DNA from: Macrostomum lignano
Lineage: Eukaryota
Direction: 5' to 3'
DNA: 60,741 bases
Assembly: GCA_002269645.1 (NCBI GenBank)
Contig: NIVC01004099.1
Location: 1 to 60,741, forward strand
Shown here: one piece after another, positions 5,902-60,308 of the stretch
Layout: every line of letters starts with the position of its first letter
How positions within the stretch are numbered: position 1 is the first letter of the stretch
The notes under the pieces: model-generated
What the model was told of the DNA's origin: nothing
The model's input: the letters and a program-made list of their open reading frames with translations, nothing else
Database searches by the model: none
Position numbers and translations under genes: made by a program

Positions 5902-8153
5902 GTGACGGCCGACGGCCGCCGCCTCCAGATGGTGGTCTGCTCGGCCACTCTGCACGCCCAGGAGGTGCGGCGAATGGCCGAACGCCTCATGTACTTTCCT
6001 GTATGGATCGATTTGAAAGGCCAAGACTCTGTGGCCGACACCATTCATCATTGCGTGTGCCCAGTGGACCCCTTGGCTGACCAGTCCTGGAGGCAGTTGC
6101 TGAACAAAAATACCAAATCCAGAATTCAAACTGACGGTGTACATCTCAACGATCGTGTTGGCAGCTCAGACAGTCCGGAGACTCTGTCCGAAGCTGTCAA
6201 ACTGCTCAAAGGCGAATACGTGATTAGAGCAATTGAGAAGCACAACATGGATCGGTGCTTGATCTTCTGTCGCACTAAGTTAGACTGCGACAACCTGGAG
6301 CACCTGTTCATAACAAAGGGTGGCGGACCTCGGGCTAGGAAAGGCGCGCCTTACAGTTGCGTCTGTCTGCACAGCGACCGCAAGCCGCAGGAGCGCAAGG
6401 ACAATTTAGAACGCTTCAAAAATGCTGATGTGAGATTTCTCATCTGCACCGATGTGGCTGCTAGAGGTATTGATATCTCAGGTGAGTGACTGGCGTCATT
6501 TTGCTTATCTGCTTTTGGATCCTGAGCTGAGCACTCTGTCTAATCTCCCCCTGTCTTATTCTGATCTCACCCTGTCTTATTCTGATCTCACCCTGTCTTA
6601 TTCTGATCTCACCCTGTCTTATTCTGATCTCCCCTGTCTTATTCTGATCTCACCCTGTCTTATTCTGATCTCACCCTGTCTTATTCTGATCTCACCCTGT
6701 CTTATTCTGATCTCACCCTGTCTTATTCTGATCTCACCCTGTCTTATTTTGATCCCACCCTGTCTTATTTTGATCTCACCCTGTCTTATTCTGATCTCAC
6801 CCTGTCTTATTCTGATCTCACCCTGTCTTATTCTGATCTCCCCTGTCTTATTCTGATCTCACCCTGTCTTATTCTGATCTCACCCTGTCTTATTCTGATC
6901 TCACCCTGTCTTATTCTGATCTCACCCTGTCTTATTCTGATCTCACCCTGTCTTATTCTGATCCCACCCTGTCTTATTCTGATCCCACCCCTTTTTATTA
7001 ATGATCTCATGCTGTCTTTTCTGATCTCACTTCACTTTTTCTATTTGGCTGTTTCCTGTCTCCTGTTTTCCTGATCAACCCCTCAACACTCACCTTAGTT
7101 CCGTCTTCATTCGGTCTCACCCCTCATCCAATCTCACCTCTCATCCGATCTCATCTCTCATCCAATCTCACCTCTCATCCAATCTCACCTCTCATCCAAT
7201 CTCACCTCTCATCCAATCTCACTCTCACCCAATCTCACCTCTCACCCAATCTCACCTCTCACCCAATCTCACCTCTCACCCAATCTCACCTCTCACCCAA
7301 TCTCACCTCTCATCCAATCTCATCTCTCATCCAATCTCACCTCTCACCCAATCTCACCTCTCACCCAATCTCACTCTCACCCAATCTCACCTCTCACCCA
7401 ATCTCACCTCTCACCCAATCTCACCTCTCACCCAATCTCACCTCTCACCCAATCTCACCTCTCATCCAATCTCACCTCTCATCCAATCTCACTCTCATCC
7501 AATCTCTCTCACACAATCTCACCTTCACCTAATCTCACTCTCACCCAATCTCACTCTCACCCAATCTCACTCTCATCCAATCTCACTCACCCAATCTCAC
7601 TCTCATCCAATCTCTCTCACACAATCTCACCTTCACCTAATCTCACTCTCACCCAATCTCATCTCTCACCCAATTTCACCCAGGCCTGCCCTTCGTGATC
7701 AACGTGACGCTACCAGACGAGAAGCAGAACTACGTGCACCGTATCGGCCGTGTCGGTCGCGCCGAGCGCATGGGCCTGGCCATCTCGCTTGTTGCCAACG
7801 TGAAAGAGAAAGTCTGGTACCATAGCAACTGCCAGACCAAGGGTCGCGGCTGCACCAACACTAACCTAGTTGAAGTGGGCGGCTGCTGTATTTGGTACAA
7901 CGAGCCTCAACTGCTAGCTGATGTCGAAGAGCATCTGGGCGTCACCATCGATCAAATCGACACGGATATGACTGTGCCAGTGAACGAATTCGATGGCAAA
8001 GTTGTGTACGGACAGAAGCAGAGAAAAGGCGGCGCTGGCCTGTACCAGGGTCACGTGAGCGTGATGCAGTCCGCTGTGAAGTCGCTTGCGAGTCTGGAGA
8101 CTCAAGCTCAGGATAGCTATCTGCAGATGCGCTTCGGCCCACCCGTTATGTAG
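5902..8153 (+). CDS. DDX1: ATP-dependent RNA helicase DDX1, last two coding exons (5902-6481, 7684-8153); the 5' exons are not in the window
   Basis: Motifs [33 protein letters not shown]|[38 protein letters not shown] and [10 protein letters not shown] closely match DDX1. Splice sites are ctgcag|GTG at 5902, G|gtgagt at 6481/6482 and cag|GC at 7683/7684, with the phase-1 join preserving the frame. Confidence 0.95.
6543..7030. repeat. 21-bp minisatellite (TCTCACCCTGTCTTATTCTGA)n in DDX1 intron
   Basis: Direct tandem periodicity visible in the sequence. Confidence 0.95.
7125..7680. repeat. 17-bp minisatellite (CCAATCTCACCTCTCAY)n in DDX1 intron, running up to the acceptor
   Basis: Direct tandem periodicity (e.g. 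7162 to 7179). Confidence 0.95.
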
Positions 8154-13358: not shown

Positions 13359-13407
<49 letters not shown>

Positions 13408-13450: not shown

Positions 13451-13494
<44 letters not shown>

Positions 13495-43505: not shown

Positions 43506-43524
43506 GGTTCTGATTCTGAATGTC

Positions 43525-44172: not shown

Positions 44173-45639
44173 ACTGTCTGATACATGCATCTGATTTGTC
44201 TCCCTCATTCATGTTGTCTAAAATTGATGATGCATCTTCTGTCCCAATGCTTCATTGATTGAAGTTGGCGAAAGCAACTGTACTTCAATCTCTGTGGCTT
44301 CCATGAAGGAAACGTAAGTGACCAATTGGTACAGCTCCACTAAAAACCAATCCATTCCACCAGATTGGTACAGCTCCACTAAAAACCAATCCATTCCACC
44401 AGATTGTTATCGCCTCAGAGAATCGCCTCAGGCCAATCGCACTGAATTGAACCACAGTTCATGCAATTTTTCGTTTTTTTCGAAGACGCATTTCGGCTGA
44501 GCTGCTCAGCCTCTCAACTGCAGTCTCGGGCTTCATCAGTTGTTTACCATTAAAGTGCAGCCGAGCTCTGGCAGCCTATCTCTCTTCTATCCAGCTCTCG
44601 GCCGCAGCAATGCACTGCATTTTGCAGTCCTGCTAACAATGGCTGTTAACAATAGTTATTTATGACAGAATAACGCAGTCTTGAGGCGTATAGGGAGCGG
44701 GTGGGTAGAGAGGCCAGCTCAAACTCAAGCAGCAATTATCTCTGCTCGCTCGCTATTCTCAGGCCAGCACACGGCTCTGCCAGCCTCCCTGCGGTTTAAA
44801 GGCCAGCTCTGTCCAGGCTTTGCGGTTGCCGGGGCAACCAGCAGTGCTGTACTCAGTCTGTTTTGAGTAGTCAGCTGGGTGAGGCTGCATTCTAGCTGGA
44901 CTTGTTTATTGCATCTGAGACAGGGGTTACGGGGGGTTGGGTGGTTCGAGAGGCCAGTATGGGGTGATTACGAACTCGAAAAGTTTTCTCTTTGCCAGCT
45001 TGTATCACGCCAGACTATCGCACTGCGAGTGCTGAGCTGGGTGGGGCCGTTCCAGATGAAGGTCAGAGACTGCGAGCGCATTTTCAGTGATTTGTTTTTG
45101 CAATGTTGCCTCAGGCGCTGCTCTTCAGCTGCAGTGTCTGGAGCGGCAGGTCAAGACAAGATTTTGGCGCTGCGGTTTCTTAAACAGCAGAACGCATAGA
45201 AATCAGAGATGAAGCGCATCTGCAGGCTCTTAAATAAATCAGTATTCACAGGAGCGCTGCGGGCTCTCTGGCGCAACGCTTTCGGCGGCATCGTGACGCA
45301 ACCAGTGCTGACGGCGACTCCTGAGCCATGCAAGCGCGCCAATGCTGTACGCAGGCACAGCACTCATGCACACGCTCACACAGGGTGTACAGCGGCTCCG
45401 ACTTTCTTATCCTGTCAGGCATGTACACTTTCTGTGCCTTGGGGGCCGGCCGGCTGCGAATCACACTAAAACTCATTGGGCCAAATTTTCCTGCTCACAC
45501 AAGCCCGAGTGAGTGCGGCCGCGCTCGGAATCGAACCCAGGGTCACGGTGGGAGAATCCGGCGAGTTTGGCGCTGCTCTGCCCGTGTTCGCAAACCCTTT
45601 GCTCAAATTCAGTTGCAATTCAACTAATCCGACTGGGAG

Positions 45640-46595
45640 CGCCCCTGTCTCTTGCCGGGCACCCCTGTCTCTTGCCGGGTACCCCTGTCTCTTGCCGGGC
45701 ACCCATGTCTCTTGCCGGGCACCCCTGTCTCTTGCCGGGCACCCCTGTCTCTTGCCGGGCACCCCTGTCTCTTGCCGGGCACCCCTGTCTCTTGCGGGCG
45801 CCCCTGTCTCTTGCCGGGCACCCCTGTCTCTTGCCGGGTACCCCTGTCTCTTGCCGGGCAATCCTGTCTCTTGCCGGGCACCCCTGTCTCTTGCCGGGCG
45901 CCCCTGTCTCTTGCCGGGCACCCCTGTCTCTTGCCGGGCACCCCTGTCTCTTGCCGGGCACCCCTGTCTCTTGCCGGGCGCCCCTGTCTCTTGCCGGGCA
46001 CCCCTGTCTCTTGCCGGGTACCCCTGTCTCTTGCCGGGCAATCCTGTCTCTTGCCGGGCACCCCTGTCTCTTGCCGGGCGCCCCTGTCTCTTGCCGGGCA
46101 CCCCTGTCTCTTGCCGGGCACCCCTGTCTCTTGCCGGGCACCCCTGTCTCTTGCCGGGCGCCCCTGTCTCTTGCCGGGCACCCCTGTCTCTTGCCGGGCG
46201 CCCCTGTCTCTTGCCGGGCACCCCTGTCTCTTGCCGGGTACCCCTGTCTCTTGCCGGGCAATCCTGTCTCTTGCCGGGCACCCCTGTCTCTTGCCGGGCG
46301 CCCCTGTCTCTTGCCGGGCACCCCTGTCTCTTGCCGGGCACCCCTGTCTCTTGCCGGGCACCCCTGTCTCTTGCCGGGCGCCCCTGTCTCTTGCCGGGCA
46401 CCCCTGTCTCTTGCCGGGCGCCCCTGTCTCTTGCCGGGTACCCCTGTCTCTTGCCGGGCACCCCTGTCTCTTGCCGGGCATCCCTGTCTCTTGCCGGGCA
46501 CCCCTGTCTCTTGTCGAGCACCCCTGTCTCTTGCCGGGCACCCCTGTCTCTTGCCGGGCATCCCTGTCTCTTGCCGGGCACCCCTGTCTCTTGCC
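45640..46595. repeat. 20-bp minisatellite (CCCCTGTCTCTTGCCGGGCA)n, array 2
   Basis: Direct tandem periodicity. Confidence 0.97.
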
Positions 46596-47240
46596 ACAGA
46601 GGCCGGTTGCCACCTGTTCAAAACATGAAACAGAAGGAGCGGCAGTGATGAGAGGCTTCTGCAGAAAAGCGAAAGAATTTCAATATTATTGCCGCTAAAT
46701 GCACTCGCCAAACTCAGCCCAGCAGACTCTCAACTGCCTGAGCTGCGCACGAGAGGAACAGGTGAAAGCATAGGAGAGTCGGGAGAGAGCCAGAGCCCTG
46801 TTGCCAGCCAGCCAATGCTCTGCAGCTGCTGCAGTTACGAAGGCCAGTGGGCAGAGTGAGAGAGAAAACTGGCCCAGTTTAGCAATGCATTTTCTGTACA
46901 TTTGACCGCCTCCTCAAACCGATGCACTGCGGGACTGAGCAGCATTTTACACCGCTCAGTGGGCCATTAAATGCATTTAAAGATCTCACACTGCACTCAG
47001 GCACAATGGGTCAGCTCAGCCTCATCAAGTACACCTTGGGGTGGCCGCTGCAGCCGCAGTCTCTCCGTTGCCATGCTGGGTGCACAGAGGCAAAAGCCCT
47101 CACGCTCGGGAGAGAAGTTTCGGTTGCTGAGGCCGGGGTGGTCAAGGGGTGGCCTCGCCAGAGGCTGCAAAAATGTGAGCAGCTGAGGAATGAGGCGTTA
47201 AAAATTTTCTGGCAACCCGCTGCACAAACCTTTGAAACAC

Positions 47241-47762
47241 CTGCCACTCTGACAGCAGCCGTGACTGACATCTGCCACTCTGACAGCAGCCGTGACTGAC
47301 ATCTTCCACTCTGACAGCAGCCGTGACTCACATCTGCCACTCTGACAGCAGCCGTGACTGACATCTGCCACTCTGACAGCAGCCGTGACTGACATCTGCC
47401 ACTCTGACAGCAGCCGTGACTGACATCTGCCACTCTGACAGCAGCCGTGGCTGACATCTGCCACTCTGACAGCAGCCGTGACTGACATCTGCCACTCTGA
47501 CAGCAGCCGTGACTGACATCTGCCACTCTGACAGCAGCCGTGACTGACATCTGCCACTCTGACAGCAGCCGTGACTGACCATCTGCCACTCTGACAGCAG
47601 CCGTGACTGACATCTGCCACTCTGACAGCAGCCGTGACTGACATCTGCCACTGGAACAGCAGCCGTAACTGACATCTGCCAGTCTGACAGCAGCCGTGAC
47701 TGACATCTGCCACTCTGACAGCAGCCGTGACTGACATCTGCCACTCTGACAGCAGCCGTGAC
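47241..47762. repeat. 31-bp minisatellite (CTGCCACTCTGACAGCAGCCGTGACTGACAT)n
   Basis: Direct tandem periodicity (47241 to 47272). Confidence 0.95.
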
Positions 47763-47907
47763 GGTTGAAAAAGCCTCTTCAAATATTGCTTCAAAAAGTA
47801 CAGCCGCAATCTTTCTTCCTCCCTCTTTCTCCCTTCCTCTCTCACCCTTTCTCTCTCTTAGTTTTTCTCCCACTTAACCTTTTTTATCCATACCGCTCTC
47901 CAGAACA

Positions 47908-50900
47908 ATGAGCCAAAATAAAAGCCGACATCAGCAACCGACCACCGAAAACATTACTGCTGCTGCACGTAATGGTCGTTTTCAAGACGTCAAGTTTCTT
48001 ATCCGAAAACTCAATGACCAATCAAACAGGGACACCTGCTGCATCAAAGCTGCCGAAAAAGCTGCATACAATGGTCACATTGGAATCGTCAAGTTTCTCA
48101 TCTCACAAATCAATGACCAATCAAACAGGGACACCTGCTGCATCAAAGCTGCCGAAAATGCTGCACTCTGTGGTCACTTTGAAATCGTCAAGTTTCTCCT
48201 CTCACAAAACAATGACCAATCAAACAGGGACACCTGCTGCATCAAAGCTGCCGAAAATGCTGCAGTCTGTGGTCACTTTGAAATCGTCAAGTTTCTCCTC
48301 TCACAAATCAATGACCAATCGAACAGGGACACCTGCTGCATCAAAGCTGCCGAAAAAGCCGCAAACGATGGTCATTTTGGAGTCGTCAAGTTTCTCGTCC
48401 CACAAATCAATGACCAATCGAACAGGGACACCTGCTGCATCAAAGCTGCCGAAAATGCTGCAAACAATGGTCACTTTGAAGTCGTCAAGTTTCTGCTCTC
48501 ACAAATCAATGGCCTATCGAACAGGGACACCTGCTGCATCAAAGCTTCCGAAAAAGCTGCAATCCGTGGTAACTTTAAATTCGTCAAGTTTCTCCTCTCA
48601 CAAATCAATAACCAATCGAACAGGGACACCTGCTGCATCAAAGCTGCCGAAAATGCTGCAAGTAATGGTTACATTGAAATCGTCAAGTTTCTCGTACCAC
48701 AAATCAATGGCCAATCGAACAGGGACACCTGCTGCATCAAAGCTGCCGAAAAAGCCGCAAACAATGGTCACTTTGAAATCGTCAAGTTTCTCGTACCACA
48801 AATCAATGGCCAATCGAACAGGGACACCTGCTGCATCAAAGCTGCCGAAAAAGCCTCAAACAATGGTCACTTTGAAATCGTCAAGTTTCTCGTACCACAA
48901 ATCAATAACCAATCGAAACGGGACACCTGCTGCATCGAAGCTGCCGAAAAAGCCGCAAACAATGGTCACTTTGAAGTCGTCAAGTTTCTCGTACCAGAAA
49001 TCAATGACCAATCGAACAGGGACACCTGCTGCATCAAAGCTGCCGAAAAAGCCGCAAACAATGGTCACTTTGAAATCGTCAAGTTTGTTGTACCACAAAT
49101 CAATGACCAATCGAACAGGGACACCTGCTGCATCAAAGCTGCCGAAAATGCTGCACTCCGTGGTCACTTTGAAATCGTCAAGTTTCTCCTCTCACAAATC
49201 AATGACCAATCGATCAGGGACACCTGCTGCATCAAAGCTGCCGAAAATGCCTCATACAATGGTCACTTTGAAGTCGTCAAGTTTCTCGTACCAGAAATCA
49301 ATGACCAATCGAACAGGGACACCTGCTGCATCAAAGCTGCCGAAAAAGCTGCAAACAATGGTCACTTTGAAATCGTCAAGTTTGTTGTACCACAAATCAA
49401 TGACCAATCGAACAGGGACACCTGCTGCATCAAAGCTGCCGAAAATGCTGCACTCCGTGGTCACTTTGAAATCGTCAAGTTTCTCCTCTCACAAATCAAT
49501 GACCAATCGATCAGGGACACCTGCTGCATCAAAGCTGCCGAAAATGCCTCATACAATGGTCACTTTGAAGTCGTCAAGTTTCTCGTACCAGAAATCAATG
49601 ACCAATCGAACAGGGACACCTGCTGCATCAAAGCTGCCGAAAAAGCTGCAAACAATGGTCACTTTGAAATCGTCAAGTTTGTTGTACCACAAATCAATGA
49701 CCAATCGAACAGGGACACCTGCTGCATCAAAGCTGCCGAAAATGCTGCAATGTGTGGTAACTTTGAAATCGTCAAGTTTTTCCTCTCACAAATCGATGAC
49801 CAATCGAACAGGGACACCTGCTGCATCAAAGCTGCCGAATATGCTGCACTCCGTGGTCACTTTAAAATCGTCAAGTTTCTCCTCTCACAAATCAATGACC
49901 AATCGAACAGGGACACCTGCTGCATCAAAGCTGCCGAAAAAGCCGCAAACAATGGTCACTTTGAAGTCGTCAAGTTTCTTGTACCACAAATCAATGACCA
50001 ATCAAACAGGGACACCTGCTGCAACAAAGCTGCCGAAAAAGCCGCAAACAATGGTCACTTTGAAGTCGTCAAGTTTCTTGTACCACAAATCAATGGCCTA
50101 TCGAACAGGGACACCTGCTGCATCAAAGCTGCCGAAAATGCTGCACTCCGTGGTCACTTTGAAATCGTCAAGTTTCTCCTCTCACAAATCAATGACCAAT
50201 CGATCAGGGACACCTGCTGCATCAAAGCTGCCGAAAAAGCTGCAATCCGTGGAAACTTTAAATTCGTCAAGTTTCTCCTCTCACAAATCAATGACCAATC
50301 GAACAGGGACACCTGCTGCATCAAAGCTGCCGAAAATGCTGCACTCCGTGGTCACTTTGAAATCGTCAAGTTTCTCCTCTCACAAATCAATGACCAATCG
50401 ATCAGGGACACCTGCTGCATCAAAGCTGCCGAAAATGCTGCAAACAATGGTCACTTTGAAGTCGTCAAGTTTCTCGTACCAGAAATCAATGACCAATCGA
50501 ACAGGGACACCTGCTGCATCAAAGCTGCCGAAAATGCTGCACTCCGTGGTCACTTTAAAATCGTCAAGTTTCTCCTCTCACAAATCAATGACCAATCGAT
50601 CAGGGACACCTGCTGCATCAAAGCTGCCGAAAAAGCCGCAAACAATGGTCACTTTGAAGTCGTCAAGTTTCTTGTACCACAAATCAATGACCAATCAAAC
50701 AGGGACACCTGCTGCAACAAAGCTGCCGAAAAAGCCGCAAACAATGGTCACTTTGAAGTCGTCAAGTTTCTGCTCTCACAAATCAATGGCCTATCGAACA
50801 GGGACACCTGCTGCATCAAAGCTGCCGAAAATGCTGCAGACAATGGTCACTTTGAAAGCGTCAAGTTTGTTGTATCACAAATCAATGACCAATCGAACAG

Positions 50901-52224
50901 GGACACCTGCTGCATCAAAGCTGCCGAAAATGCTGCACTCCGTGGTCACTTTGAAATCGTCAAGTTTCTCCTCTCACAAATCAATGACCAATCGAACAGG
51001 GACACCTGCTGCATCAAAGCTGCCGAAAAAGCTGCATACAATGGTCACATTGGAATCGTCAAGTTTCTCCTCTCACAAATCAATGACCAATCGAACAGGG
51101 ACACCTGCTGCATCAAAGCTGCCGAAAGTGCTGCAAACAATGGTCACTTTGAAGTCGTCAAGTTTCTGCTCTCACAAATCAATGGCCTATCGAACAGGGA
51201 CGCCTGCTGCATCAAAGCTGCCGAATATGCTGCACTCCGTGGTCACTTTGAAATCGTCAAGTTTCTCCTCTCACAATTCAATGACCAATCGAACAGGGAC
51301 ACCTGCTGCATCAAAGCTGCCGAAAATGCTGCAATCGGTGGTCACTTTAAAGTCGTTGATTTTTTTTTTTCGTGTCTCTCAAGTGCCGATCAGAAAGCGA
51401 ATCTCCGTTTCCAATGCGCAGTCGCTGCTTGCTCTCGTCTTCACGAAAATGTCGTTGCCTCCCTCAGCCTGGAGCCCGACTGGCTCTTCCAATCCAGCAG
51501 CACCCTCAACTTCATTGCAGCAATGGCCATCCAAGGCACCAACTCCGTTCTCACCGACACTCTCTCTCGAATGCAAGCAGCTGAAATCACACGCCTGCTC
51601 CGTCTCTCCATCTCTCAAAGACACGTCGCTCTTGCCGCTACACTGCTCAATCATGAGCGATTCAGCACACAGCATGTCGATCTCCCAGACGACAACACCC
51701 GAGCCACCGCTCTCATGCTCGCAGCTGATGCAGGTCATCACGAACTTATTCACAAACTAATCCATCTCGGTGCCTCACTGCACGCTCAAGACACTCACGG
51801 TCGCACTGCTCTGTCACGAGCCTGCCAAGCCGGTCACGTGCGAGCAGCCAAGACTCTCATCGACAATGGAGCCGATGCCAGCCATCAAGACAGTCAGGGC
51901 CTCACATGTGCGCAGCTCGCGCAGCAATTTGAGCAGCGGCAGGTGCTGCGGCTGCTGAATCCTACCGTGTCAGTTCCCTTTACTTACCTTTCCACATCAC
52001 ATCACTTCCCTACCTTACCTCGCTTTCCTTCACACATTCCAGAAATCGACAGCAGCCCAAGCCATCCGCTCACCGCCTCCATCTGTGAGTCTGACCGCTT
52101 TCAATGTCCCCTTCCTTCCTTGGGTTGTGCTTGGGCCACTCTGCAAATCCTACTACATATCGTGCAGATAGAGCCGGGTTTTCAGAATTTTGACGCAAAA
52201 AACGCAAATTATACTACTATCTGA
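47908..52224 (+). CDS. Ankyrin-repeat protein: ~34 near-identical atypical 33-aa repeats plus 2-3 canonical ankyrin repeats; the true 3' end is probably spliced after ~51965
   Basis: ATG-initiated open frame. The 99-bp unit is NDQSNRDTCCIKAAEKAANNGHFEVVKFLVPQI, followed by canonical TALMLAADAGH..LIHLGA..D.HGRTALSRACQAGH..LIDNGAD. Confidence 0.8.
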   Translation: MSQNKSRHQQPTTENITAAARNGRFQDVKFLIRKLNDQSNRDTCCIKAAEKAAYNGHIGIVKFLISQINDQSNRDTCCIKAAENAALCGHFEIVKFLLSQNNDQSNRDTCCIKAAENAAVCGHFEIVKFLLSQINDQSNRDTCCIKAAEKAANDGHFGVVKFLVPQINDQSNRDTCCIKAAENAANNGHFEVVKFLLSQINGLSNRDTCCIKASEKAAIRGNFKFVKFLLSQINNQSNRDTCCIKAAENAASNGYIEIVKFLVPQINGQSNRDTCCIKAAEKAANNGHFEIVKFLVPQINGQSNRDTCCIKAAEKASNNGHFEIVKFLVPQINNQSKRDTCCIEAAEKAANNGHFEVVKFLVPEINDQSNRDTCCIKAAEKAANNGHFEIVKFVVPQINDQSNRDTCCIKAAENAALRGHFEIVKFLLSQINDQSIRDTCCIKAAENASYNGHFEVVKFLVPEINDQSNRDTCCIKAAEKAANNGHFEIVKFVVPQINDQSNRDTCCIKAAENAALRGHFEIVKFLLSQINDQSIRDTCCIKAAENASYNGHFEVVKFLVPEINDQSNRDTCCIKAAEKAANNGHFEIVKFVVPQINDQSNRDTCCIKAAENAAMCGNFEIVKFFLSQIDDQSNRDTCCIKAAEYAALRGHFKIVKFLLSQINDQSNRDTCCIKAAEKAANNGHFEVVKFLVPQINDQSNRDTCCNKAAEKAANNGHFEVVKFLVPQINGLSNRDTCCIKAAENAALRGHFEIVKFLLSQINDQSIRDTCCIKAAEKAAIRGNFKFVKFLLSQINDQSNRDTCCIKAAENAALRGHFEIVKFLLSQINDQSIRDTCCIKAAENAANNGHFEVVKFLVPEINDQSNRDTCCIKAAENAALRGHFKIVKFLLSQINDQSIRDTCCIKAAEKAANNGHFEVVKFLVPQINDQSNRDTCCNKAAEKAANNGHFEVVKFLLSQINGLSNRDTCCIKAAENAADNGHFESVKFVVSQINDQSNRDTCCIKAAENAALRGHFEIVKFLLSQINDQSNRDTCCIKAAEKAAYNGHIGIVKFLLSQINDQSNRDTCCIKAAESAANNGHFEVVKFLLSQINGLSNRDACCIKAAEYAALRGHFEIVKFLLSQFNDQSNRDTCCIKAAENAAIGGHFKVVDFFFSCLSSADQKANLRFQCAVAACSRLHENVVASLSLEPDWLFQSSSTLNFIAAMAIQGTNSVLTDTLSRMQAAEITRLLRLSISQRHVALAATLLNHERFSTQHVDLPDDNTRATALMLAADAGHHELIHKLIHLGASLHAQDTHGRTALSRACQAGHVRAAKTLIDNGADASHQDSQGLTCAQLAQQFEQRQVLRLLNPTVSVPFTYLSTSHHFPTLPRFPSHIPEIDSSPSHPLTASICESDRFQCPLPSLGCAWATLQILLHIVQIEPGFQNFDAKNANYTTI

Positions 52225-52925
52225 AAATGAAGTAAGTAGTATACAAAAACGCTATCCTAAGCGTGATATGGCAATATGTAGTCGTAATAATCCATGTGCT
52301 CATATATGTACATTAATTCCATGTACATTAATCCCTATCTATCTCAAATTGGATATGTACATTAATTCCATGTACATTAATCCATATCTCAAATGTCCAT
52401 GTCTATCCCCAATTCTATATGTACACTTACATTGATCTACAGTGTCATCCCCAGACGTCCCGCGCGCACCAACATTACATGCACAATGCTACATGTACAC
52501 AGAGGTGAGAATTACTAATCTTATCTACTACCAAATGAGTCAACTAACCGTGTAGCGCACATCATGTATAAGTATTTACAATGAAGATATATTTACATTT
52601 AATCAGTAGCATATTACAGGAATCAAGACATGTACACCATCACCAGCAAATAGAATATACAGAAAATTTTACATTGTTTTTCAATAATTTTCTCTTCATA
52701 AATGATTTTAAACAGGTTTGACATGCAAAATATGTACAATAGATTTTTAAATTGGCAATTTCGCCACACGCAATGCAAAAATGTTTTATGTACATTGAAA
52801 TATATACAGCAAATAGATTCTGATAAATACAGCAATACTACAATGAAAATTATGTACAATAAATAGATTTTACTAATTTAATATTGCAAAATGTACATTG
52901 AATCGTCAGTTATAATTGGATTACA

Positions 52926-53182: not shown

Positions 53183-53456
53183 GTAGTAGTATAGAAAAAG
53201 ACGCTTCTAGACCCAGAGCACTTTTTTAATGACCGTTTTGAGGGTCTGGAGGGGGGACACGGGGGGTAAATAAAAAAACACATCTAAACACCATTAATAC
53301 ATCTAATCACCCATAATCACCCCTAACAATAAAAATCACTTCCCAACACTTCCAAACACTCCCCAACACCCCCTCGCGTCCCCCCTCTTAAGACCTTAAA
53401 AACGGCCATTAAAATAAGGTCTGATCTAGAGGCGTCTTTTTCTATACTACTACTCT
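53183..53456. repeat. Imperfect inverted repeat of the terminal ~85 bp (arms ~53183-53268 and ~53367-53453)
   Basis: GTAGTAGTATAGAAAAAGACGC at 53183 and its exact reverse complement ending at 53453; the similarity continues inward with mismatches. Confidence 0.9.
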
Positions 53457-53839: not shown

Positions 53840-54094
53840 ATGAACTATTATTCTATAACAGAAACGACATTTATTGTGAAAAATATATATAAAAAAATGA
53901 AGGTAAATCGAACCCATGGTTCGCGTGCTTTGCACGATTACTCCTACATCGGAAATGTGCCGATTAATGAACTTAATGAAAATTTAAGTCTAATCACCGT
54001 TGAACAAATGTCAATAATAATATTAGTAACAATAATAGTAATAATATTGTTTTTGTTTGTTATAAAAAATTTACTACCATGTTGTCTTAAGTAA
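53840..54094 (+). CDS. Viral small membrane protein (84 aa, C-terminal TM helix)
   Basis: AAAAAATG start; hydrophobic IIILVTIIVIILFLFVI followed by KNLLPCCLK. Confidence 0.55.
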   Translation: MNYYSITETTFIVKNIYKKMKVNRTHGSRALHDYSYIGNVPINELNENLSLITVEQMSIIILVTIIVIILFLFVIKNLLPCCLK

Positions 54095-54104: not shown

Positions 54105-55712
54105 TTAGTTCGCAGACATTATCTGGTTCTCATAAAAAGAACCCAATATTTCTTCACCGTCCTTATCAGCAATTATATAGGTTGTAGGATTGGTATTTAA
54201 AACTTTACTGATAGTAAATTTCTCACTTATCTTCCAATATCCTTTTCTTCCTTTTTCAAACTTATCTTTCCATTTATAGATATAAACAGAATCACCAACC
54301 TTAAAAGATTTCTTTTTATTTTTTTCAAATTTTCCAAAAGTAACTTTAACTTTTTCAGGATTGTTATAAGCTTGTTGAGGAGTCATCTTTATAGCTGAAT
54401 GATATGAGTTATTATAATCTTTCACGACGTCTGGTAATATTTTTACCCACTTTTGGTTTCCATTAAGACTAAACTGAATCCACAATTTCTTACCTAAAGT
54501 TCGATTAAATCTTTCTATTAATGCGTTTTTGCTTTCTCCATAAATAGAATAAATTTTATTAATATACTCCCCATTCGCGTCCTTTTTCCTTTCTTGTCCT
54601 TTTTCAAAATGATACAATTTATACATGTGAGGATTGTAAAATTCTTTTCCTTCGTCAACACACAAACGTTCGCTTTTTTCTCCAAGACTTCTAAAAGCAG
54701 CAGCAACATCCTCTCCTTTTTTGGATTTCAAAGGAACAGCCCACGCGTAGCGAGTAAAACCATCTAATATTGTTAAGATATATTTATATCCTCTTTCGTT
54801 CGGCATCGACATTAAATCAGCATACCAAATTTCATTCTTTTTGAAGTTCATGATTTTTCTATAAAATTTAGGTTTTCGGTATTCTTTATGAAGAACCTTA
54901 GCCTTATCATAACTTAGCCCACTACCACTTAATAACAAACATTCGACACAATTATTACCATGTTGGTTGTAATTAATTCCTAAACCAAATTTAACTTTAG
55001 ACTGCAAAATCTTTTTAACCATCCACCTAGTTAATCTTTGCCCTACCGATAATCCCTGCAAGTTATCTAATCCTTGAATCATTTTTTGATCGGCTTCGTG
55101 TTTTAATCTTAACGCTTCCTCGGGCGGGTTCTTGTCAGCATCTCTATATGCTAAGTCGTGATAGTATGCTAACCAATCAATCCCATTTATTGGAATTGAA
55201 TCAGATTTTGGAGTGTCATCAGGATTTAATCTCAAATCTAAGCGAGTGCCGGGTAGTTTACCCTCAATCTTTCGAAAGAGGCTGGAGCACACCTTAAGCG
55301 GCGATAATTACCGCCCATCTCCGTCTGCTCTCTGAACCTTCTCCTTATATTTAAAATACTTAGGAGCTTGGCTGCGCATTGCCACCGTGTCTTCAAGCTT
55401 TTTACCATCGAACCATAGGTTCGCGGACGAAGTCCGATTGGGAAGAGGAGTTACCTCTGTTCCTTCAAAAGATTTCTCAATTGAAGTGGTACTTGAAGCT
55501 GTATGATGGGTTTCACGCAATTTGGAGATGTCGCCACAAATAGTGACTAGCAAGGACATTGCCTTCCTCACTCAGGCCACGGGTTAACCTGTGAAGTTCA
55601 TTGATGGTAGGTGTAGTTCCCCTGTATATTTACCAGTAGTAAAGATTGGTGGCAAGCTTGTTAATCCTTTTTGAACATCTAAAAATCCTCCTTCAAATAC
55701 TATTTGGTTCAT
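54105..55712 (-). CDS. PLA2 (parvovirus VP1u-like) - retroviral-type integrase fusion, 424 aa after splicing; exon 1 55712-55587, exon 2 55253-54105
   Basis: Exon 1 reads MNQIVFEGGFLDV..GELHLPSMNFTG and joins PGTRLDLRL..PINGIDWLAYYHDLAY..HEADQKM (PLA2 GPG loop, HD and D). Integrase follows with WYADL, YILTILDGFTRYAWAVPLKSK, CVDEGKEF, IERFNRTL, YNNSYHSAIKMTP and FKVGDSV..GSFYE (D-D-E triad). Confidence 0.92.
55254..55586 (-). ncRNA. Group I intron, IC1-like, 333 nt, no internal homing-endonuclease ORF
   Basis: P1 exon CAGGU pairs with IGS GCCUG (U.G at the splice site). P3 CAUCUCC/GGAGAUG; P AAAUUGCGUGAAA; Q AAUGCGCAGCC; R GUUCAGAGAGCAGA; S AAGGUGUGCUCC; P7 GAGCA/UGCUC. L5b GAAA loop with receptor CCUAAG..UAAGG in P6; P8 GGCGGU/AUCGCC; P9 with GAAA loop; P9.0 AG/CU. 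Removal restores NFTG-PGT. Confidence 0.93.
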
Positions 55713-56196
55713 TTTTAATGTTTAAAAAACATGTTTCTATCAATTTAATAATTTCTAAATATTGGCCACCATATAAAAAATTTAAAGCAAATTCCCCAGT
55801 TAACAAGGTAACTCCATTATCAAATACTTTTTGTACGGGGTTTTTAGTAGTATTATTAATGCAAATATAATATAAATCAAATTCGGGATTAACATATTTA
55901 AATTCTAATAACTTTTGAATATTTCTAAATCGACTTGATGAATTATCTGTGTTATCAGAAGATTTTAACTCTAACGCAACTTTTCTTTCTGTATGAATTA
56001 AATCAATTTTATTTACTTTTTCAAAACCAAAATGTTTAATAGCTAATAATTCATAAAGAGATCCAAGTCTCATTTGTATTGTTTTAATATGGTTTGCAAT
56101 TATTAATTCATCTTGAAATATTTTATTTAGTATTCTGTCAGAACCAACTTTATCACAAATAGGCTTACAAAGGTGGTCTTTTATTGTTTCATCCAT
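55693..56196 (-). CDS. PD-(D/E)XK restriction-endonuclease-like nuclease (Eco47II-like type as seen in large DNA viruses), 167 aa
   Basis: KTIQMRLG, then IDL..ALELKSSDNTDNSSS..N..KL.EFK..NPE, giving a D..ELK catalytic pattern. The family assignment is from recalled similarity. Confidence 0.65.
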   Translation of the reverse strand: MDETIKDHLCKPICDKVGSDRILNKIFQDELIIANHIKTIQMRLGSLYELLAIKHFGFEKVNKIDLIHTERKVALELKSSDNTDNSSSRFRNIQKLLEFKYVNPEFDLYYICINNTTKNPVQKVFDNGVTLLTGEFALNFLYGGQYLEIIKLIETCFLNIKNEPNSI

Positions 56197-56219: not shown

Positions 56220-56888
56220 TTAAACTCCAGTATGTCCAGCAGCTTTCGCAGCAGCTAAAACAAGTTTTCGCGGTGTTTTAAATCCATCACCAACAGCTGG
56301 TTTGTTATTTATAGAATTAACAATCCATTTATACAAGCTGGTATTTTTAACAGCTCCTCCTAACTCATCATAAAAAATTCTAGCACTTATTAATTCATCC
56401 CTAGTATATAAATCGGGGTTAAATTTTACCCTAGGGTTCGTAATAATATTAAATGCTCCGCCCAATTCTCTATATAGTTCATTTCGATCTTTAACAACGT
56501 TACCAATTCGATAATTATTACCTAAATCTGTCGCAGCAATACTACGTGGCGCATCTCTTGGAAATTGTTCAACTCCACCCCTAATCTCTGCACGTCTAAT
56601 CTCTGCAACTCTCAATAGTGCTTGATCAACATCATAAGCAGGCGGCTCATCCAAAATTTCATCCTCTTTTGGCTCTGTATTCTTAGCAATTTTTTCAAGA
56701 AGGTCTTTATCTATTTTTTCTAGTTCACTAATTTTCCCCGTAATAGGATTAACAAAAGGAGCAGCAAATCTTTCGCCAGCTAATTGTATTCCTAACTTTC
56801 TTTTTTGTAAAGTTCTAACAAAATCAGAATATCTTTGCTTCTCTTTATAAATCGCTAACTCTCCATCAACGTCCATAAATTGACTCAT
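56220..56888 (-). CDS. Viral hypothetical protein (222 aa)
   Basis: Intact ORF with AAAAAATG start; divergent from the MCP gene across a 34-bp gap. Confidence 0.7.
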   Translation of the reverse strand: MSQFMDVDGELAIYKEKQRYSDFVRTLQKRKLGIQLAGERFAAPFVNPITGKISELEKIDKDLLEKIAKNTEPKEDEILDEPPAYDVDQALLRVAEIRRAEIRGGVEQFPRDAPRSIAATDLGNNYRIGNVVKDRNELYRELGGAFNIITNPRVKFNPDLYTRDELISARIFYDELGGAVKNTSLYKWIVNSINNKPAVGDGFKTPRKLVLAAAKAAGHTGV

Positions 56889-56922: not shown

Positions 56923-58395
56923 ATGGCTGAAACAAAAACTATGTGGAGTGATAAATTTCATTTCAAAAAGCACCGACAGTATATTAATGAGGTCAGAGCA
57001 AGAGATTTAAATTATACCCTACCAACAAGTGATAATTCAAATAACTTTACTACTGGAACGGTAACTTTTGACATCGGCGCAACCAACACTATATTGGATA
57101 TGAAAAATGCGTTTTTCCGCGTTAGATGGTTATATACTAGAAATGATGGAACTGCTCTTGCAGCCGGAGATATCGCAGATCGATCCGGAATAATAATAGA
57201 AAATGATTGGTTTTATAAATGTTTTTCCCAAGCTCAACTAACTGTTAATGGTGCTGAGGTTGAGACATCATCAAACCCCGCAGAGATTAATGGAGTTTTG
57301 AAACATTTAAATTATACTTATTTATCAAAACAAGTTGGTGATAATGTTGGGTGGATGCCGGATAAAGGTAACGGCCAAGCAGTAGTTTTCCCTAATGTAC
57401 AAAACGCAGCCGGTGCAGATACTGCAGCGCTAATTGTTTACCTTAATACAAACATAGTTCCAGTTGTAACCACTATGACTAATACAAAAGATATTAATAC
57501 TGGTTTTATAGATCGTCAGAATAAATTCCCAGTCGCGGTTTTAACCACAGCAACAGCATATGAGCAGGACTTTTCAATCTTTCCACTATTTGGGTTCTTC
57601 TCACCAAATCGGGTATGGAAAGGATTAAAATTTGGGATACAGTTGCAAATATCTGGTGGATATCAGCCTAGGATACTTTATGGAACCTCAATTTCAACCG
57701 ATATAGCAGTTCGTATAGATTCAATTCAATTAGTCGTACCAACTATTGAGGTAACAGCCCCACTTTTAAAACACATCGATAATCAGTTAACGCATGATCA
57801 GGAAATATTTTATTTGAATCGTAGACACTTTATGCGAACCATTAATAACAATCAGGATTCATTCCAGTGGCAAATACTGACATCAAAACGTCGGGTGAGA
57901 TATATTTTTGTTTGGTTTAAGATAACAAATAGAAGGAGTAAAAGAGCAAATGGGGATTTATATTGGCTTCAATCCGGTGCCATAGCAGAACAAGCAGCCA
58001 CCGCAACAGACAATGCGGCTGCAGCTATTAACGAGTTTAATGTTCAGAATATCCGCCTGCAGGTTGATGATCAATATTATCCGGTTAAAGATCCTCTTAA
58101 TCTAAATATTGCAAATAATAATGTTAATGATTTTATAAAATATTATCAAGATTATGCCAAAAATGAAGCATATGCCGTCCCTCAGTACACACCCACAGAG
58201 TTTCTAAACATTCATCCAGTGGTTGTTTATGATCTAACGGCACAGAAAGAAAACGTAGCCAATATTGGACTTAATTATATGTTAGAGATTAATAAAACTG
58301 GTAATCAGGCACTTGACGCCCACGTATTGTTTCTAGAGGAATATATGTCAATTGCTAAAGCTGATGGCACGATTGTTCGGGACGCCCCGCTGTAA
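56923..58395 (+). CDS. Double jelly-roll major capsid protein (Polinton PY/hexon-like), 490 aa
   Basis: Size, beta-rich composition, C-terminal YYP..PLNLNIANN..YYQDY..EFL..HPVVVYDLT.Q pattern, and position next to the ATPase and penton. Confidence 0.82.
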   Translation: MAETKTMWSDKFHFKKHRQYINEVRARDLNYTLPTSDNSNNFTTGTVTFDIGATNTILDMKNAFFRVRWLYTRNDGTALAAGDIADRSGIIIENDWFYKCFSQAQLTVNGAEVETSSNPAEINGVLKHLNYTYLSKQVGDNVGWMPDKGNGQAVVFPNVQNAAGADTAALIVYLNTNIVPVVTTMTNTKDINTGFIDRQNKFPVAVLTTATAYEQDFSIFPLFGFFSPNRVWKGLKFGIQLQISGGYQPRILYGTSISTDIAVRIDSIQLVVPTIEVTAPLLKHIDNQLTHDQEIFYLNRRHFMRTINNNQDSFQWQILTSKRRVRYIFVWFKITNRRSKRANGDLYWLQSGAIAEQAATATDNAAAAINEFNVQNIRLQVDDQYYPVKDPLNLNIANNNVNDFIKYYQDYAKNEAYAVPQYTPTEFLNIHPVVVYDLTAQKENVANIGLNYMLEINKTGNQALDAHVLFLEEYMSIAKADGTIVRDAPL

Positions 58396-58444: not shown

Positions 58445-59175
58445 ATGGTAAAGGCAAAACACGATAAGATATTTCCAAATGATCCTTTTCTTTGTTTAGT
58501 AATCGGAGGATCAGGTAAAGGAAAAACACACTTTGTTTACGATTTATTAACAACAGATGGAATGTTAGACTATAATAATTTAATAATTTATACTAATAAA
58601 CCTAGAATAAAATATTATGAATTTCTTAAACATGGATTAAAAAACAAATTAAAAAAAGATGTCTTGTTTAGAATGTTAAGAGCATATGAGCAATATGAGG
58701 ATGATGACGAACCGCGATTTACACTCGATGACATTGAGGATTTATGTAAAACAATGGCACAACAGCCAGAAAACATCACCGATCGCGCCCCAACTGTTAG
58801 AGTATCAACCCGATTAGCCTATGATCAAATTCCAAAACATGATAAAACACTAATTATTTTTGATGATTGTATTAATGACGGTGATCAAGAATTGCAAAAG
58901 GAAATTTTTGTTAGTGGTAGAGGAGATGGAATCGGAGCTTTTTATCTAACACAGTCTTTAGAGAATTAGAATCGATTATAAAAAAGAATGCAAGTTGTTG
59001 TGTAATGTTTGATTTAGATAATTATGATTTACAAAATATTCACGCTAGATTTAATCCCGGATTGGATGCAAAACCATTTAAAAGTATGTGTAAAAAAATT
59101 TGGGATGATAGCCAATACAAACATATTTATATCAATCCGAGGTTAGAAAGGAAAATCGAATTTAAAAATTTATAA
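58445..59175 (+). CDS. A32/FtsK-like genome-packaging ATPase, with a -1 frameshift at ~58950
   Basis: Walker A GGSGKGKT, Walker B IIFDD and FYLTQS. The shifted frame continues ELESIIKKNASCCVMF..DLQNIHARF..F..MC..IW to TAA at 59173-59175. Confidence 0.88.
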
Positions 59176-59276
59176 AAGAAGACGATAGGAAGAAGAATGA
59201 TCGCCCCATAGGGTCGCGAACTTCGTTCGATCGTTCCTTCGGAACGCGGACTTCGTCCGATTCTTCCACTATAAAA

Positions 59277-60060
59277 ATGACTACAAATTTAGATACTATA
59301 AAAAATTGGTAGATCGAACTAATTCAAAATTTAGTACAACATTACAGTTTATAATGACAACCAGCGAGCAACGGATTCAATTGCGCGATCCATTACAACT
59401 TGATCAAAGCCTAAGTTATCAAATAGGTTTAATACTATTTTCGGTTTTCAACATGCCTCAATTAATTAATGCAACAAATAATCAATTTAGATATTCTAAA
59501 GATTCCGGAGCCAATTGGACAACATTTAGCGTTAACCCAGGAGCGTATAGCTATACTGATTTGAATGCTTATATAGAAGGAGAATTAACAACTAATGGTG
59601 ATTGGGTAGCAGGAGCAATTGTTATAGGTGTTGATTTACCGTCTGGCAGATTCACACTATCACTAGGATCCGGATATCAGGTTGATTTCACAATTGCAAA
59701 TTCACTCAGAACCATACTTGGATTTAATTCCGAATAGTTACCACATCAAGCACCGGTGATACAGTTGGAAATATAGAGGGTGGAGTAAATACAATTAATA
59801 TAACAACCGACATTTCAAACGGTGGTTATATAACAGACGATAACGGAGTTTTGGTTCAACGTGGAATTATTTATTCAATCCCATTTCTTGTTGTTCCAAT
59901 TGGAGAGAAAATGATTGTATCACCTCAAACCCCAATATATTACCCATTAAATCAATATAATGTTCAATCAATTTATATTAGGATTGTAGATGAAAGCGAT
60001 AGATTAATAAGTTTTGGTGGGCAATCAATAACAATAATTTTACGGATAAAACAGGTTTGA
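59277..60060 (+). CDS. Minor capsid (penton, single jelly-roll), with -1 frameshifts at ~59300 and ~59733
   Basis: Reconstructed MTTNLDTIKKLVDRTNSKFSTTLQF..DPLQLD..YQIGL..F..LRTILGF..GEKMIVSPQTPIYYPL..IYIRIVDESDRLISFGGQSITIILRIK matches the Polinton penton pattern. Confidence 0.8.
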
Positions 60061-60308
60061 TCGAACCTTTGGTTCGCGGACTCCGTACGATCGTCCCGTA
60101 GGGTCGCGTGCTTTGCACGATCGTCCGTTTCCTATAGTAAAAATGTAATAATAATAAAAAAACAATCAGAAAAGTTAAAAAAGCTGAAGATAATTACGAA
60201 CTAGAACTAGCAAAATTAAGGCAGTTACAAGCTGATAAATAAGAAAGGAATTGTTAAAACCCACACCTACGAAACTAACTAAAACCAAGAGTTTTTCAGG
60301 AACATAAA

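What the first reader, a model, noticed from the sequence alone, without database searches (positions are those of the whole stretch)
55254..55586. Complete IC1-type group I self-splicing intron inside a gene of an animal endogenous Polinton virus
Seen in sequence: the minus-strand PLA2 motif ELHLPSMNFTG (ends 55587) is followed at once by TAA, and resumes as PGTRLDLRL at 55253. The 333 nt between fold into a full group I core: P1 with a U.G pair, P2 (GCAA loop), P2.1, a 7-bp P3, P4, and P5abc with an A-rich bulge and GAAA L5b. It also has P6 with an 11-nt-receptor-like CCUAAG/UAAGG, P7, P8 and P9/P9.0. P7 is GAGCA/UGCUC instead of the usual GACUA/UAGUC, a double compensatory change that keeps the G264-C311 guanosine site, which argues for selection on the ribozyme. 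Established knowledge: IC1 introns are typical of protist, fungal and algal nuclear rDNA and occur in some algal viruses. In animals, group I introns are known essentially from mitochondria of basal lineages. Inference: the virus acquired a self-splicing intron, probably in a non-animal host or by co-infection, and carried it into an animal nuclear genome. Expression of the full PLA2-integrase then depends on ribozyme splicing. I cannot confirm from here whether this has been described before.
Basis: partly seen in the sequence, partly recalled or inferred. Interest (0 to 1): 0.97.

Follow-up and report, generated by a model that had tools for sequence, protein, structure and literature searches.

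The report
Optional group I intron in polinton-type integrase
A real 333-base group I (self-splicing type) intron interrupts the phospholipase-integrase gene of a polinton-type virus-like element that sits next to animal genes; close relatives occur with and without it, but this copy ends in A instead of the usual G, and its splicing and true integration in the animal genome remain unproven.

Summary
Rfam's group I intron model (RF00028) matches the minus strand 55596..55263 at 60.9 bits (threshold 50, E 7.7e-15), but only when under about 1 kb is searched; at 8.7 kb and 60 kb the speed filters lose it. P1-P9 pair as expected, including the U.G at the 5' splice site and P7 GAGCA/UGCUC.

Relatives 88% and 94% identical in protein exist with and without an interruption at this site, so the intron is optional.

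- The inserted unit ends in A, not the canonical terminal G. One natural precedent exists (sea-anemone mitochondrial ND5-717).
- P3 is 5+1 pairs, not 7.
- "P5abc" is a four-hairpin domain that includes a hairpin repeat also found between the element's genes.
- The IC1 subgroup and "Polinton" in the strict sense are untested.

The host side is metazoan (DDX1, rhodopsin-type GPCRs), and the element has a double-jelly-roll capsid gene. Group I introns were reported in polinton-like viruses of protists in 2025, so this is a new member in a new host setting. Splicing and physical integration could not be tested.

The parts
55587..55712 (-). Exon 1 of the PLA2-integrase gene (42 codons, ATG at 55712, last codon GGT ends at 55587)
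   Evidence: Exon 1 aligns to its last residue with the N-terminal region of more than 60 uninterrupted homologues.
55254..55586 (-). Group I intron, the inserted unit of 333 nt. It begins with TAA, which stops translation of unspliced RNA after 42 residues. It ends in A55254.
   Evidence: RF00028 at 60.9 bits, E 7.7e-15. Helices verified. Fold z -3.58. Boundaries come from the uninterrupted homologues.
55263..55596 (-). Extent of the Rfam RF00028 alignment. It ends at G55263, the alternative canonical terminal G, which would leave 9 nt (3 codons) in the mRNA.
54105..55253 (-). Exon 2: the rest of the PLA2-like domain (H-D pair) plus the rve integrase core, 382 codons and the stop. It is an uninterrupted reading frame.
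   Evidence: It shares all 35 columns that are invariant in a 27-member alignment.
55573..55591 (-). P1 hairpin with the splice-site pair U55587.G55577. The guide nucleotides 55582-55578 can form P10 with 55253-55249.
55533..55572 (-). P2 and P2.1 (two hairpins of 8 and 5 pairs; an alternative nested fold is about as good)
55391..55499 (-). P5 extension: a stem with an AAAAA bulge that carries four hairpins, one tipped by GAAA
55406..55446 (.). Copy of the element-wide paired-hairpin repeat (family D1), inside the P5 extension
55336..55372 (-). P6/P6a/P6b with the receptor-like internal loop CCUAAG/UAAGG
55285..55330 (-). Catalytic core: P7 (55330-55326 with 55289-55285), enclosing the 3' strand of P3 and P8
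55254..55284 (-). J7/9, the P9 hairpin (CCUC..GAAA..GAGG, uses G55265-G55262) and the 8-nt tail ending in A55254. P9.0 pairs 55283-55282 with 55256-55255.
55693..56196 (-). 167-aa ORF directly upstream of exon 1, function unknown. It has a sub-threshold match to a restriction-endonuclease family.
   Evidence: E 0.0022, 18.1 bits against a cutoff of 25.9. The single-sequence model is unusable, pLDDT 38.
56220..56888 (-). 222-aa ORF of the element, unassigned
   Evidence: no family match.
56923..58395 (+). Major capsid protein (double jelly roll), 490 aa, uninterrupted
   Evidence: 25 of the 32 sequences in the alignment match PF21738; the window's own protein does not. Model pLDDT 83.7, pTM 0.85. 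Foldseek probability 1.0 to capsid proteins of virophages, MELD/adinto-type viruses and giant viruses.
58445..58969 (+). A32/FtsK-like packaging ATPase candidate (174 aa). It is shorter than the family profile, and its completeness is unresolved.
   Evidence: Pox_A32 E 0.0015, below cutoff.
53906..53946 (.). D1 paired-hairpin repeat between the convergent 3' ends of two ORFs
   Evidence: No RNA family match.
59199..59269 (.). Two tandem D1 paired-hairpin units, intergenic
   Evidence: No intron there.
60059..60129 (.). Two tandem D1 paired-hairpin units, just after an ORF end
   Evidence: No intron there.
47908..52224 (+). Host-side neighbour: ankyrin-repeat ORF (34 tandem 99-nt units). GC falls from about 0.55 to about 0.3 directly after it.
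5902..6489 (+). Host-side DDX1 helicase exon, a marker of a metazoan, non-human host
   Evidence: E 1.1e-80 to PDB 8tbx DDX1, with many differences.

Best explanation
A 333-nt group I intron without an endonuclease gene is inserted between the Gly and Pro codons of the calcium-loop motif of the phospholipase-integrase gene. The gene belongs to a polinton-type virus-like element that lies beside metazoan genes. The proposed mechanism has four steps. First, the gene is transcribed through the intron. Second, the RNA folds into the P1-P9 core. Third, an external guanosine bound in P7 attacks after U55587, which is paired with G55577 in P1. Fourth, exon 1 is joined to C55253, guided by P10 and P9.0, to give a message for a protein of 424 residues. 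Unspliced RNA yields only 42 residues, because the intron starts with a stop codon. The intron is an optional, laterally moving or repeatedly lost passenger of this integrase family. Shown here: the intron core, the helices, the boundaries of the inserted unit, and its presence or absence among near-identical alleles. Inferred: actual splicing, use of the A-terminated 3' site, the means of mobility, and integration in the animal genome.
For: RF00028 scores 60.9 bits against a threshold of 50, E 7.7e-15, full model. Every core helix pairs, and the free fold recovers them with z -3.58. In more than 60 uninterrupted homologues, exon 1 aligns to its last residue and exon 2 from its proline, with contiguous subject coordinates. 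P0002, P0027, P0196 and P0197 begin with a translation of the intron's last 30 nt plus three extra codons, then the exon. P0002 (interrupted) and P0195 (uninterrupted) are 88% identical. P0020 (interrupted at the same site) and P0198 (uninterrupted) are 94% identical. The pattern is patchy in three integrase clades. P10 pairs 4 of 5 positions for the 55253 junction, and 2 or fewer of 6 positions (scattered or wobble pairs only) for the alternative junctions. The ten intron-derived residues are identical between the window and clade B, although the exon protein is only 59% identical. Exon 2 keeps all family-invariant residues. A natural spliced intron ending in A exists (PMC8146996).
Against: The terminal nucleotide at the homology-defined 3' boundary is A, while the guanosine-binding pair in P7 looks standard, so the second splicing step may be poor or absent in this copy. 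There is no RNA evidence. I had no DNA of relatives, so there is no covariation test. The run of 10 identical residues is no longer than the best-conserved protein blocks. The element's nearest relatives come from short contigs of unknown origin. No sequence is shared between the element and the host part of the window, so linkage to the animal DNA rests on the assembly alone.
Confidence: 0.68

Rival explanations
1. The intron is genuine, but this particular copy no longer completes splicing. Its non-canonical terminal nucleotide blocks exon ligation, so the integrase gene of this endogenous copy is silent, and the RNA fold is simply inherited from a recently active ancestor.
For: The terminal nucleotide is A at the boundary defined by homologues. 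The P7 guanosine site is of the standard type. In clade C the called start codon abuts the junction, which hints that the insertion there ends in the canonical nucleotide.
Against: An intron ending in A is spliced in sea-anemone mitochondria (PMC8146996). Exon 2 and the capsid gene are uninterrupted and keep all invariant residues, so the copy is not visibly decayed. P9.0 and P10 are in place.
Confidence: 0.3
2. Splicing uses the canonical terminal G at 55263, where the Rfam alignment ends. That leaves 9 nt in frame, so the protein carries three extra residues (GKL) inside the calcium-loop motif.
For: The Rfam alignment ends at G55263. The 9 nt keep the frame. Relatives keep three codons at the same place, GEL.
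Against: G55263 is paired inside a stable P9. No P10 is possible for that junction. Every uninterrupted homologue lacks the three residues, including those 88% identical to an interrupted one.
Confidence: 0.12
3. The low-GC 7-8 kb at the window's end is not part of the animal genome. It would be a polinton-like virus of a protist, alga or other associate that was joined to an animal contig by mis-assembly, so the 'animal' context is an artefact.
For: GC drops sharply from about 0.55 to about 0.3 at 52.2 kb. No repeats are shared between the two parts. The nearest relatives are on short contigs of unknown origin. The RF00028 introns known so far in such viruses are in protists.
Against: The sequence is continuous, without N. 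A GC-rich island and host-like palindromic units lie inside the transition zone at 52.9-53.5 kb. More distant members of the same integrase family sit in megabase-scale eukaryotic contigs, and one is annotated in a wasp. Recently integrated viruses commonly differ in composition from the host.
Confidence: 0.2
4. The match is a chance resemblance or another kind of structured insertion, not a group I intron.
For: The default-filter scans of the whole window and of 8.7 kb report nothing.
Against: The match is full-length and above the curated threshold with E 7.7e-15. All helices and the P3/P7 arrangement are present. The position is exactly at a codon boundary that restores a conserved motif.
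Confidence: 0.02

Closest known systems
RF00028 group I introns in polinton-like viruses of protists (Paulinella micropora, Desmodesmus armatus, Rhodomonas lacustris; PMC12220804)
   Same: Similar size (309-376 bp there, 333 here). Both lie in a protein-coding gene of a small double-jelly-roll virus-like element. The interrupted gene there is annotated as a 'short protein of about 50 aa', which is what exon 1 (42 aa) would look like to a gene caller. No endonuclease gene is noted in either.
   Different: Here the flanking genes are metazoan. The interrupted gene is identified as the PLA2-integrase. The terminal nucleotide is A. This intron is missed by the scan settings used in that survey. 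I could not test whether the introns are homologous.
Nuclear rDNA group I introns of eukaryotic microorganisms (IC1 and IE types; review PMC3679873)
   Same: Core P1-P9, two hairpins between P1 and P3, an extended P5 with a GAAA loop and an A-rich bulge, a receptor-like loop in P6, and a GAAA loop on P9. This is an IC-like architecture.
   Different: Those introns interrupt rRNA genes only, and in microbes only. This one interrupts a protein-coding gene of a virus-like element. The P5 extension has four hairpins. There is no P9.1/P9.2. Subgroup membership was not tested.
Mitochondrial ND5-717 group I intron of sea anemones and corals (PMC8146996, PMC6545197)
   Same: A group I intron in an animal, with A in place of the terminal G, that is nevertheless removed in vivo.
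   Different: It is mitochondrial, obligatory, vertically inherited and very large, with genes inside P8. Here the intron is nuclear-linked or viral, optional and small.
Group I introns in protein-coding genes of phages and algal viruses
   Same: Self-splicing-type introns placed in conserved motifs of viral protein genes, and optional among close relatives.
   Different: Those often carry or neighbour homing endonuclease genes. DNA similarity to phage records is limited to 48 nt of the conserved core.
PLA2-like genes of adintoviruses (PLA2X) and of PLVs and virophages (PMC8502044, PMC11296320)
   Same: A parvovirus-VP1-type phospholipase domain (PF08398) in polinton-type elements of animals.
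   Different: In adintoviruses PLA2 is fused to a pX-like virion core domain. Here, and in more than 1000 database relatives, it is fused to the N-terminus of an rve integrase.

Membership tests
Group I intron (RF00028) | Conserved core P3-P9 scored by the family covariance model above the curated threshold | tested here: met
   60.9 bits against 50, E 7.7e-15, model 1-253. The match appears only with a search space under about 1 kb.
Group I intron (RF00028) | P1 with a U.G wobble at the 5' splice site | tested here: met
   U55587.G55577 within a 7/7 helix. It aligns with the model's conserved U.
Group I intron (RF00028) | P3/P7 pseudoknot with a G-C guanosine-binding pair in P7 | tested here: met
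   P3 5/5 (+1) and P7 5/5, GAGCA/UGCUC. The positions equivalent to the consensus binding pair are G and C.
Group I intron (RF00028) | [quoted passage not shown] | tested here: not met
   At the boundary defined by uninterrupted homologues the last nucleotide is A55254. A G is available 9 nt upstream (55263), but it is paired in P9 and lacks P10. One natural precedent with a terminal A exists.
Group I intron (RF00028) | P10 and P9.0 pairings that position the 3' splice site | tested here: met
   P10 4/5 and P9.0 2/2 for the 55254|55253 junction. These helices are short, so the support is weak.
Group I intron (RF00028) | Removal from the transcript with exon ligation | not testable with these tools
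   No transcript data are available.
Group I intron (RF00028) | Base-pair covariation across homologues | not tested
   This needs DNA of intron-bearing relatives.
Subgroup IC1 | P2 plus P2.1, a P5abc extension with an A-rich bulge and a GNRA L5b that docks into a receptor in P6, and a subgroup-specific model score | tested here: inconclusive
   Two hairpins lie between P1 and P3. A GAAA-tipped hairpin, an AAAAA bulge and a receptor-like loop are present. But the P5 domain has four hairpins, and no subgroup model is available.
Mobile (homing) group I intron | Intron-encoded homing endonuclease | tested here: not met
   The intron is 333 nt. Its internal ORFs of 87, 56 and 54 aa have no family match. 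The adjacent 167-aa ORF has only a sub-threshold nuclease-family match.
Mobile (homing) group I intron | Presence and absence among closely related alleles at one exact site | tested here: met
   Interrupted and uninterrupted pairs at 88% and 94% protein identity, in three clades.
Polinton/Maverick (strict sense) | rve-family integrase | tested here: met
   PF00665 in exon 2 at 32.8 bits against a cutoff of 32.6. It is strong in homologues.
Polinton/Maverick (strict sense) | Double-jelly-roll major capsid protein | tested here: met
Polinton/Maverick (strict sense) | Protein-primed family B DNA polymerase | not testable with these tools
   Not present in the part of the element that lies inside the window, which ends at 60741.
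Polinton/Maverick (strict sense) | Terminal inverted repeats and target-site duplication | not testable with these tools
   Only one end can lie in the window. The left boundary is somewhere between 52225 and about 53500.
Polinton/Maverick (strict sense) | Packaging ATPase and maturation protease | tested here: inconclusive
   There is a sub-threshold A32-like match in a 174-aa ORF. No protease was found in the window.

The most novel reading that the evidence does not exclude
This is the first group I intron found in a protein-coding gene that resides in a metazoan nuclear genome. It would have been brought there by a recently integrated polinton-type virus. It is optional and still moving among these viruses without an endonuclease of its own, and it uses a terminal A. 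Routine Rfam scans miss it, so such introns may be widespread and overlooked in animal polinton-type elements.
Probability: 0.45. Interest if true: 0.78.

Novelty: new member of a known kind. Interest (0 to 1): 0.6.

Why it matters
The standard view is that nuclear group I introns occur only in rRNA genes of microbial eukaryotes, and that animals have them only in some mitochondria (PMC3679873, PMC8146996). If this locus is truly integrated and transcribed, a viral passenger can place a ribozyme-type intron in a protein-coding gene in an animal nucleus. That raises the question of whether such RNA can splice in competition with the nuclear mRNA machinery.

The presence and absence among near-identical alleles gives a natural system for studying intron gain and loss without an intron-encoded endonuclease.

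There is also a practical point. The usual filtered Rfam scan misses this intron, so surveys of virus-like elements have probably under-counted such introns, and short 'orphan' ORFs next to truncated integrase calls may be their signature.

Tried and rejected
- The whole-window Rfam scan at gathering threshold and an 8.7-kb sensitive scan gave no RF00028 hit. This is filter loss, since the 0.9-kb scan scores 60.9 bits.
- I looked for further introns at the other hairpin-repeat sites and in the gap after the ATPase-like ORF. None was found.
- Host identification failed. The exact look-up of the ankyrin ORF found nothing on record. The GPCR ORF search gave no hit at 1e-10. Cluster metadata carried no names or accessions.
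- The exon 1 search, meant to count interrupted copies, returned no candidates because the query is too short for the word index.
- DNA similarity to phage records is limited to a 48-nt core stretch in Brochothrix phages, which is uninformative.
- The capsid protein had no hit by sequence in PDB or PHROGs. It was resolved only through homologues and structure.
- The 167-aa ORF as a trans-acting nuclease remains a lead only. It has a sub-threshold family hit, no PDB hit, and an unusable single-sequence model with pLDDT 38.
- Shared repeats between element and host as evidence of residence: none found.
- I rejected spliceosomal GT-AG removal on my own reading of the sequence. No GT..AG pair I could find around these boundaries keeps the reading frame.
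- I rejected G55261 and G55262 as terminal nucleotides. They give a stop or need a shifted 5' site, and neither has a P10.
Full report
**Observation**

On the minus strand, a 42-codon reading frame starts at 55712 and ends ...NFTG at 55587. It is followed at once by TAA. The same frame resumes at 55253 with PGTRLD and runs without interruption to the stop at 54105.

The Rfam group I intron model RF00028 matches 55596..55263 over its full length. The score is 60.9 bits against a gathering score of 50, with E 7.7e-15. That match appeared only when 0.9 kb was searched. The whole-window scan at gathering threshold and a sensitive scan of 8.7 kb returned nothing. The speed filters therefore lose this intron, probably because of the roughly 110-nt insertion in P5. 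A negative result from a routine scan would have been misleading.

**Anatomy**

Direct pairing confirms the following:

- P1 is 7/7, with U55587.G55577 at the splice site.
- Two hairpins lie between P1 and P3 (P2 of 8 pairs and P2.1 of 5 pairs; a nested alternative is about as good).
- P3 has 5 contiguous pairs plus one, not 7.
- P4 is 6/6 and P5 is 5/5.
- P6/6a/6b carries the internal loop CCUAAG/UAAGG.
- P7 is GAGCA/UGCUC, 5/5. Compared with the consensus printed by Rfam, it differs on both sides of two adjacent pairs and still pairs.
- P8 is 6/6.
- P9 is closed by a GAAA loop.

The free-energy fold of the 333 nt recovers P2 to P9 without constraints (-106.1 kcal/mol, z -3.58).

It is a stem with an AAAAA bulge that carries four hairpins, one of them tipped by GAAA. 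Two of these hairpins are a copy of a paired-hairpin repeat (family D1). That repeat also lies downstream of ORFs elsewhere in the element, at 53906, 59199, 59229, 60059 and 60089. Those other sites hold no intron.

The intron-internal ORFs have no family match, so there is no endonuclease gene.

**Boundaries**

I searched exon 2 alone and exon 1 alone, by reference.

Exon 2 finds 1151 proteins. Most combine the parvovirus-type PLA2 domain PF08398 with the integrase core PF00665. In more than 60 uninterrupted homologues, exon 1 aligns to its last residue and exon 2 aligns from its proline, with contiguous subject coordinates. The uninterrupted state therefore reads ...G|PG....

The Rfam alignment ends 9 nt earlier, at G55263. 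But G55265-G55262 are paired in a stable P9, followed by an 8-nt tail that ends in A55254. The guide nucleotides next to the splice-site pair can form P10 with 55253-55249 at 4 of 5 positions. For exon starts at 55262, 55261 or 55260 they give only 2, 0 and 2 of 6 positions, scattered or wobble. A 2-pair P9.0 fits the same junction.

The price is that the terminal nucleotide is A, not the guanosine that defines the family. A spliced natural intron with a terminal A is documented in sea-anemone mitochondria (PMC8146996), so the feature does not by itself disprove activity.

**Relatives**

Four proteins (P0002, P0027, P0196, P0197) begin with a translation of the intron's last 30 nt. These are ten residues identical to the window's, followed by three extra codons (GEL against GKL here) and then the exon.

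- P0002 is 88% identical to the uninterrupted P0195.
- P0020 begins with a start codon that abuts the same junction. It is 94% identical to the uninterrupted P0198.
- The window's own nearest relative, P0001/P0193 (71%), is uninterrupted.

The interruption is therefore present or absent within each of three integrase clades, and the three extra codons are present with it and absent without it. This is the pattern of an optional, mobile or repeatedly lost intron, and it fixes the inserted unit at 333 nt.

The ten intron-derived residues are as well conserved as the better protein blocks, although the exon protein is only 59% identical. That is modest support for constraint on the RNA or for recent lateral transfer.

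The proteins cannot show the terminal nucleotide in clade B. In clade C, the start codon at the junction hints at the canonical one.

**Context**

The 490-aa ORF at 56923-58395 belongs to a rare family, with 72 hits among 1.84 billion representatives. Of the 32 sequences in the alignment (the window's protein and 31 homologues), 25 match the double-jelly-roll domain PF21738; the window's own protein does not. A confident model (pLDDT 83.7, pTM 0.85) matches capsid proteins of virophages, MELD/adinto-type viruses and giant viruses at probability 1.0.

A 174-aa ORF has a sub-threshold A32-type ATPase match. The element is therefore of polinton type. The polymerase and the terminal repeats that define Polintons in the strict sense are not in the window.

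Within the window I counted no stops or frameshifts in integrase exon 2 or in the capsid gene. The ATPase-like ORF is shorter than its family profile, and I could not resolve whether it is complete.

The other 52 kb carry these features:
- a DDX1 exon (E 1.1e-80 to PDB 8tbx, with many differences)
- two rhodopsin-family receptor ORFs, an RNase H and a DUF7041 remnant
- a tandem ankyrin array and many minisatellites

This is a metazoan genome and not human. The species could not be named.

GC falls from about 0.55 to about 0.3 at 52.2 kb. Nothing in the window proves or disproves that the two parts are physically joined in the animal.

**Comparison with what is known**

Reviews state that nuclear group I introns occur only in rRNA genes of microbial eukaryotes (PMC3679873). 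However, a 2025 survey found RF00028 introns in polinton-like viruses of three protist groups, inside 'short proteins of about 50 aa' (PMC12220804). That survey used the filtered scan settings that miss the present intron.

The present case is thus a new member of a known kind. What is new is the metazoan setting, the identified host gene, the optional distribution, and the terminal A.

**Verdict**

| Claim | My estimate |
|---|---|
| A genuine group I intron | about 0.97 |
| The inserted unit is 55586..55254 | about 0.9 |
| This copy splices at that 3' site | about 0.5-0.6 |
| The element is truly integrated in an animal genome | about 0.75-0.8 |

I stopped when I noticed it. The corresponding statements above rest only.

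Noticed in passing
window 53906-53946, 55406-55446, 59199-59269, 60059-60129: This is a family of paired 5-6-bp GC-rich hairpins with triloops, in units of about 30 nt and often in tandem. They lie downstream of ORFs in the low-GC element, and one copy lies inside the intron's P5 extension. They could be terminator-like signals or a miniature mobile palindrome.
   Followed up: partly
window 55263-55596 (method): RF00028 scores above its gathering threshold, but the match is reported only when less than about 1 kb is searched. At 8.7 kb and at 60.7 kb the speed filters drop it, so filtered genome-wide scans would miss introns of this build.
   Followed up: yes
window 55693-56196 (minus): A 167-aa ORF overlaps the start of exon 1 by about 20 nt. 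It has a sub-threshold match to the Eco47II restriction-endonuclease family (E 0.0022). A nuclease acting in trans on the intron site is conceivable but unsupported, because the single-sequence model was unusable.
   Followed up: partly
window 47908-52224 and 47972-51760 (plus): Two long overlapping ORFs in different frames run over a tandem array of 34 units of 99 nt, about 90% alike. One frame encodes some 23 ankyrin repeats. The second open frame is probably a by-product of the repeat.
   Followed up: partly
window 23209-24042 and 30907-31740 (plus): Two near-identical 277-aa ORFs lie 7.7 kb apart and match rhodopsin-family receptors (7tm_1, Srw-like) from profile position 56 onwards. They have no database relative at E 1e-10. 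They look like a recent local duplication of a fast-evolving receptor gene or pseudogene.
   Followed up: partly
window 53183-53453, also 52210-52234: A 271-nt unit is bounded by 29-nt inverted repeats that are 97% complementary, and it sits inside a GC-rich island in the host-element transition zone. Its terminal motif recurs at 52210-52234. Its weak microRNA-family match (35.8 bits against a threshold of 135) is not membership. It may be a miniature transposon.
   Followed up: partly
window 6500-13500 and 40300-47800: Dense minisatellite arrays with periods of 15-48 nt and up to 95 copies, with strong GC skew. They create spurious ORFs in all six frames.
   Followed up: no
window 55315-55362 (query positions 225-272 of the minus strand): The P6-J6/7-P7-P3 core stretch is 81% identical over 48 nt to an unannotated or 'hypothetical' place in Brochothrix phage A9-type genomes. 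That place is presumably a phage group I intron.
   Followed up: no
proteins P0020, P0055, P0024 (relatives, protein level only): In a third integrase clade the ORF calls start exactly at the same junction. P0024 starts a few residues before it, with unrelated upstream text. This suggests further, possibly different, insertions at this one site.
   Followed up: partly
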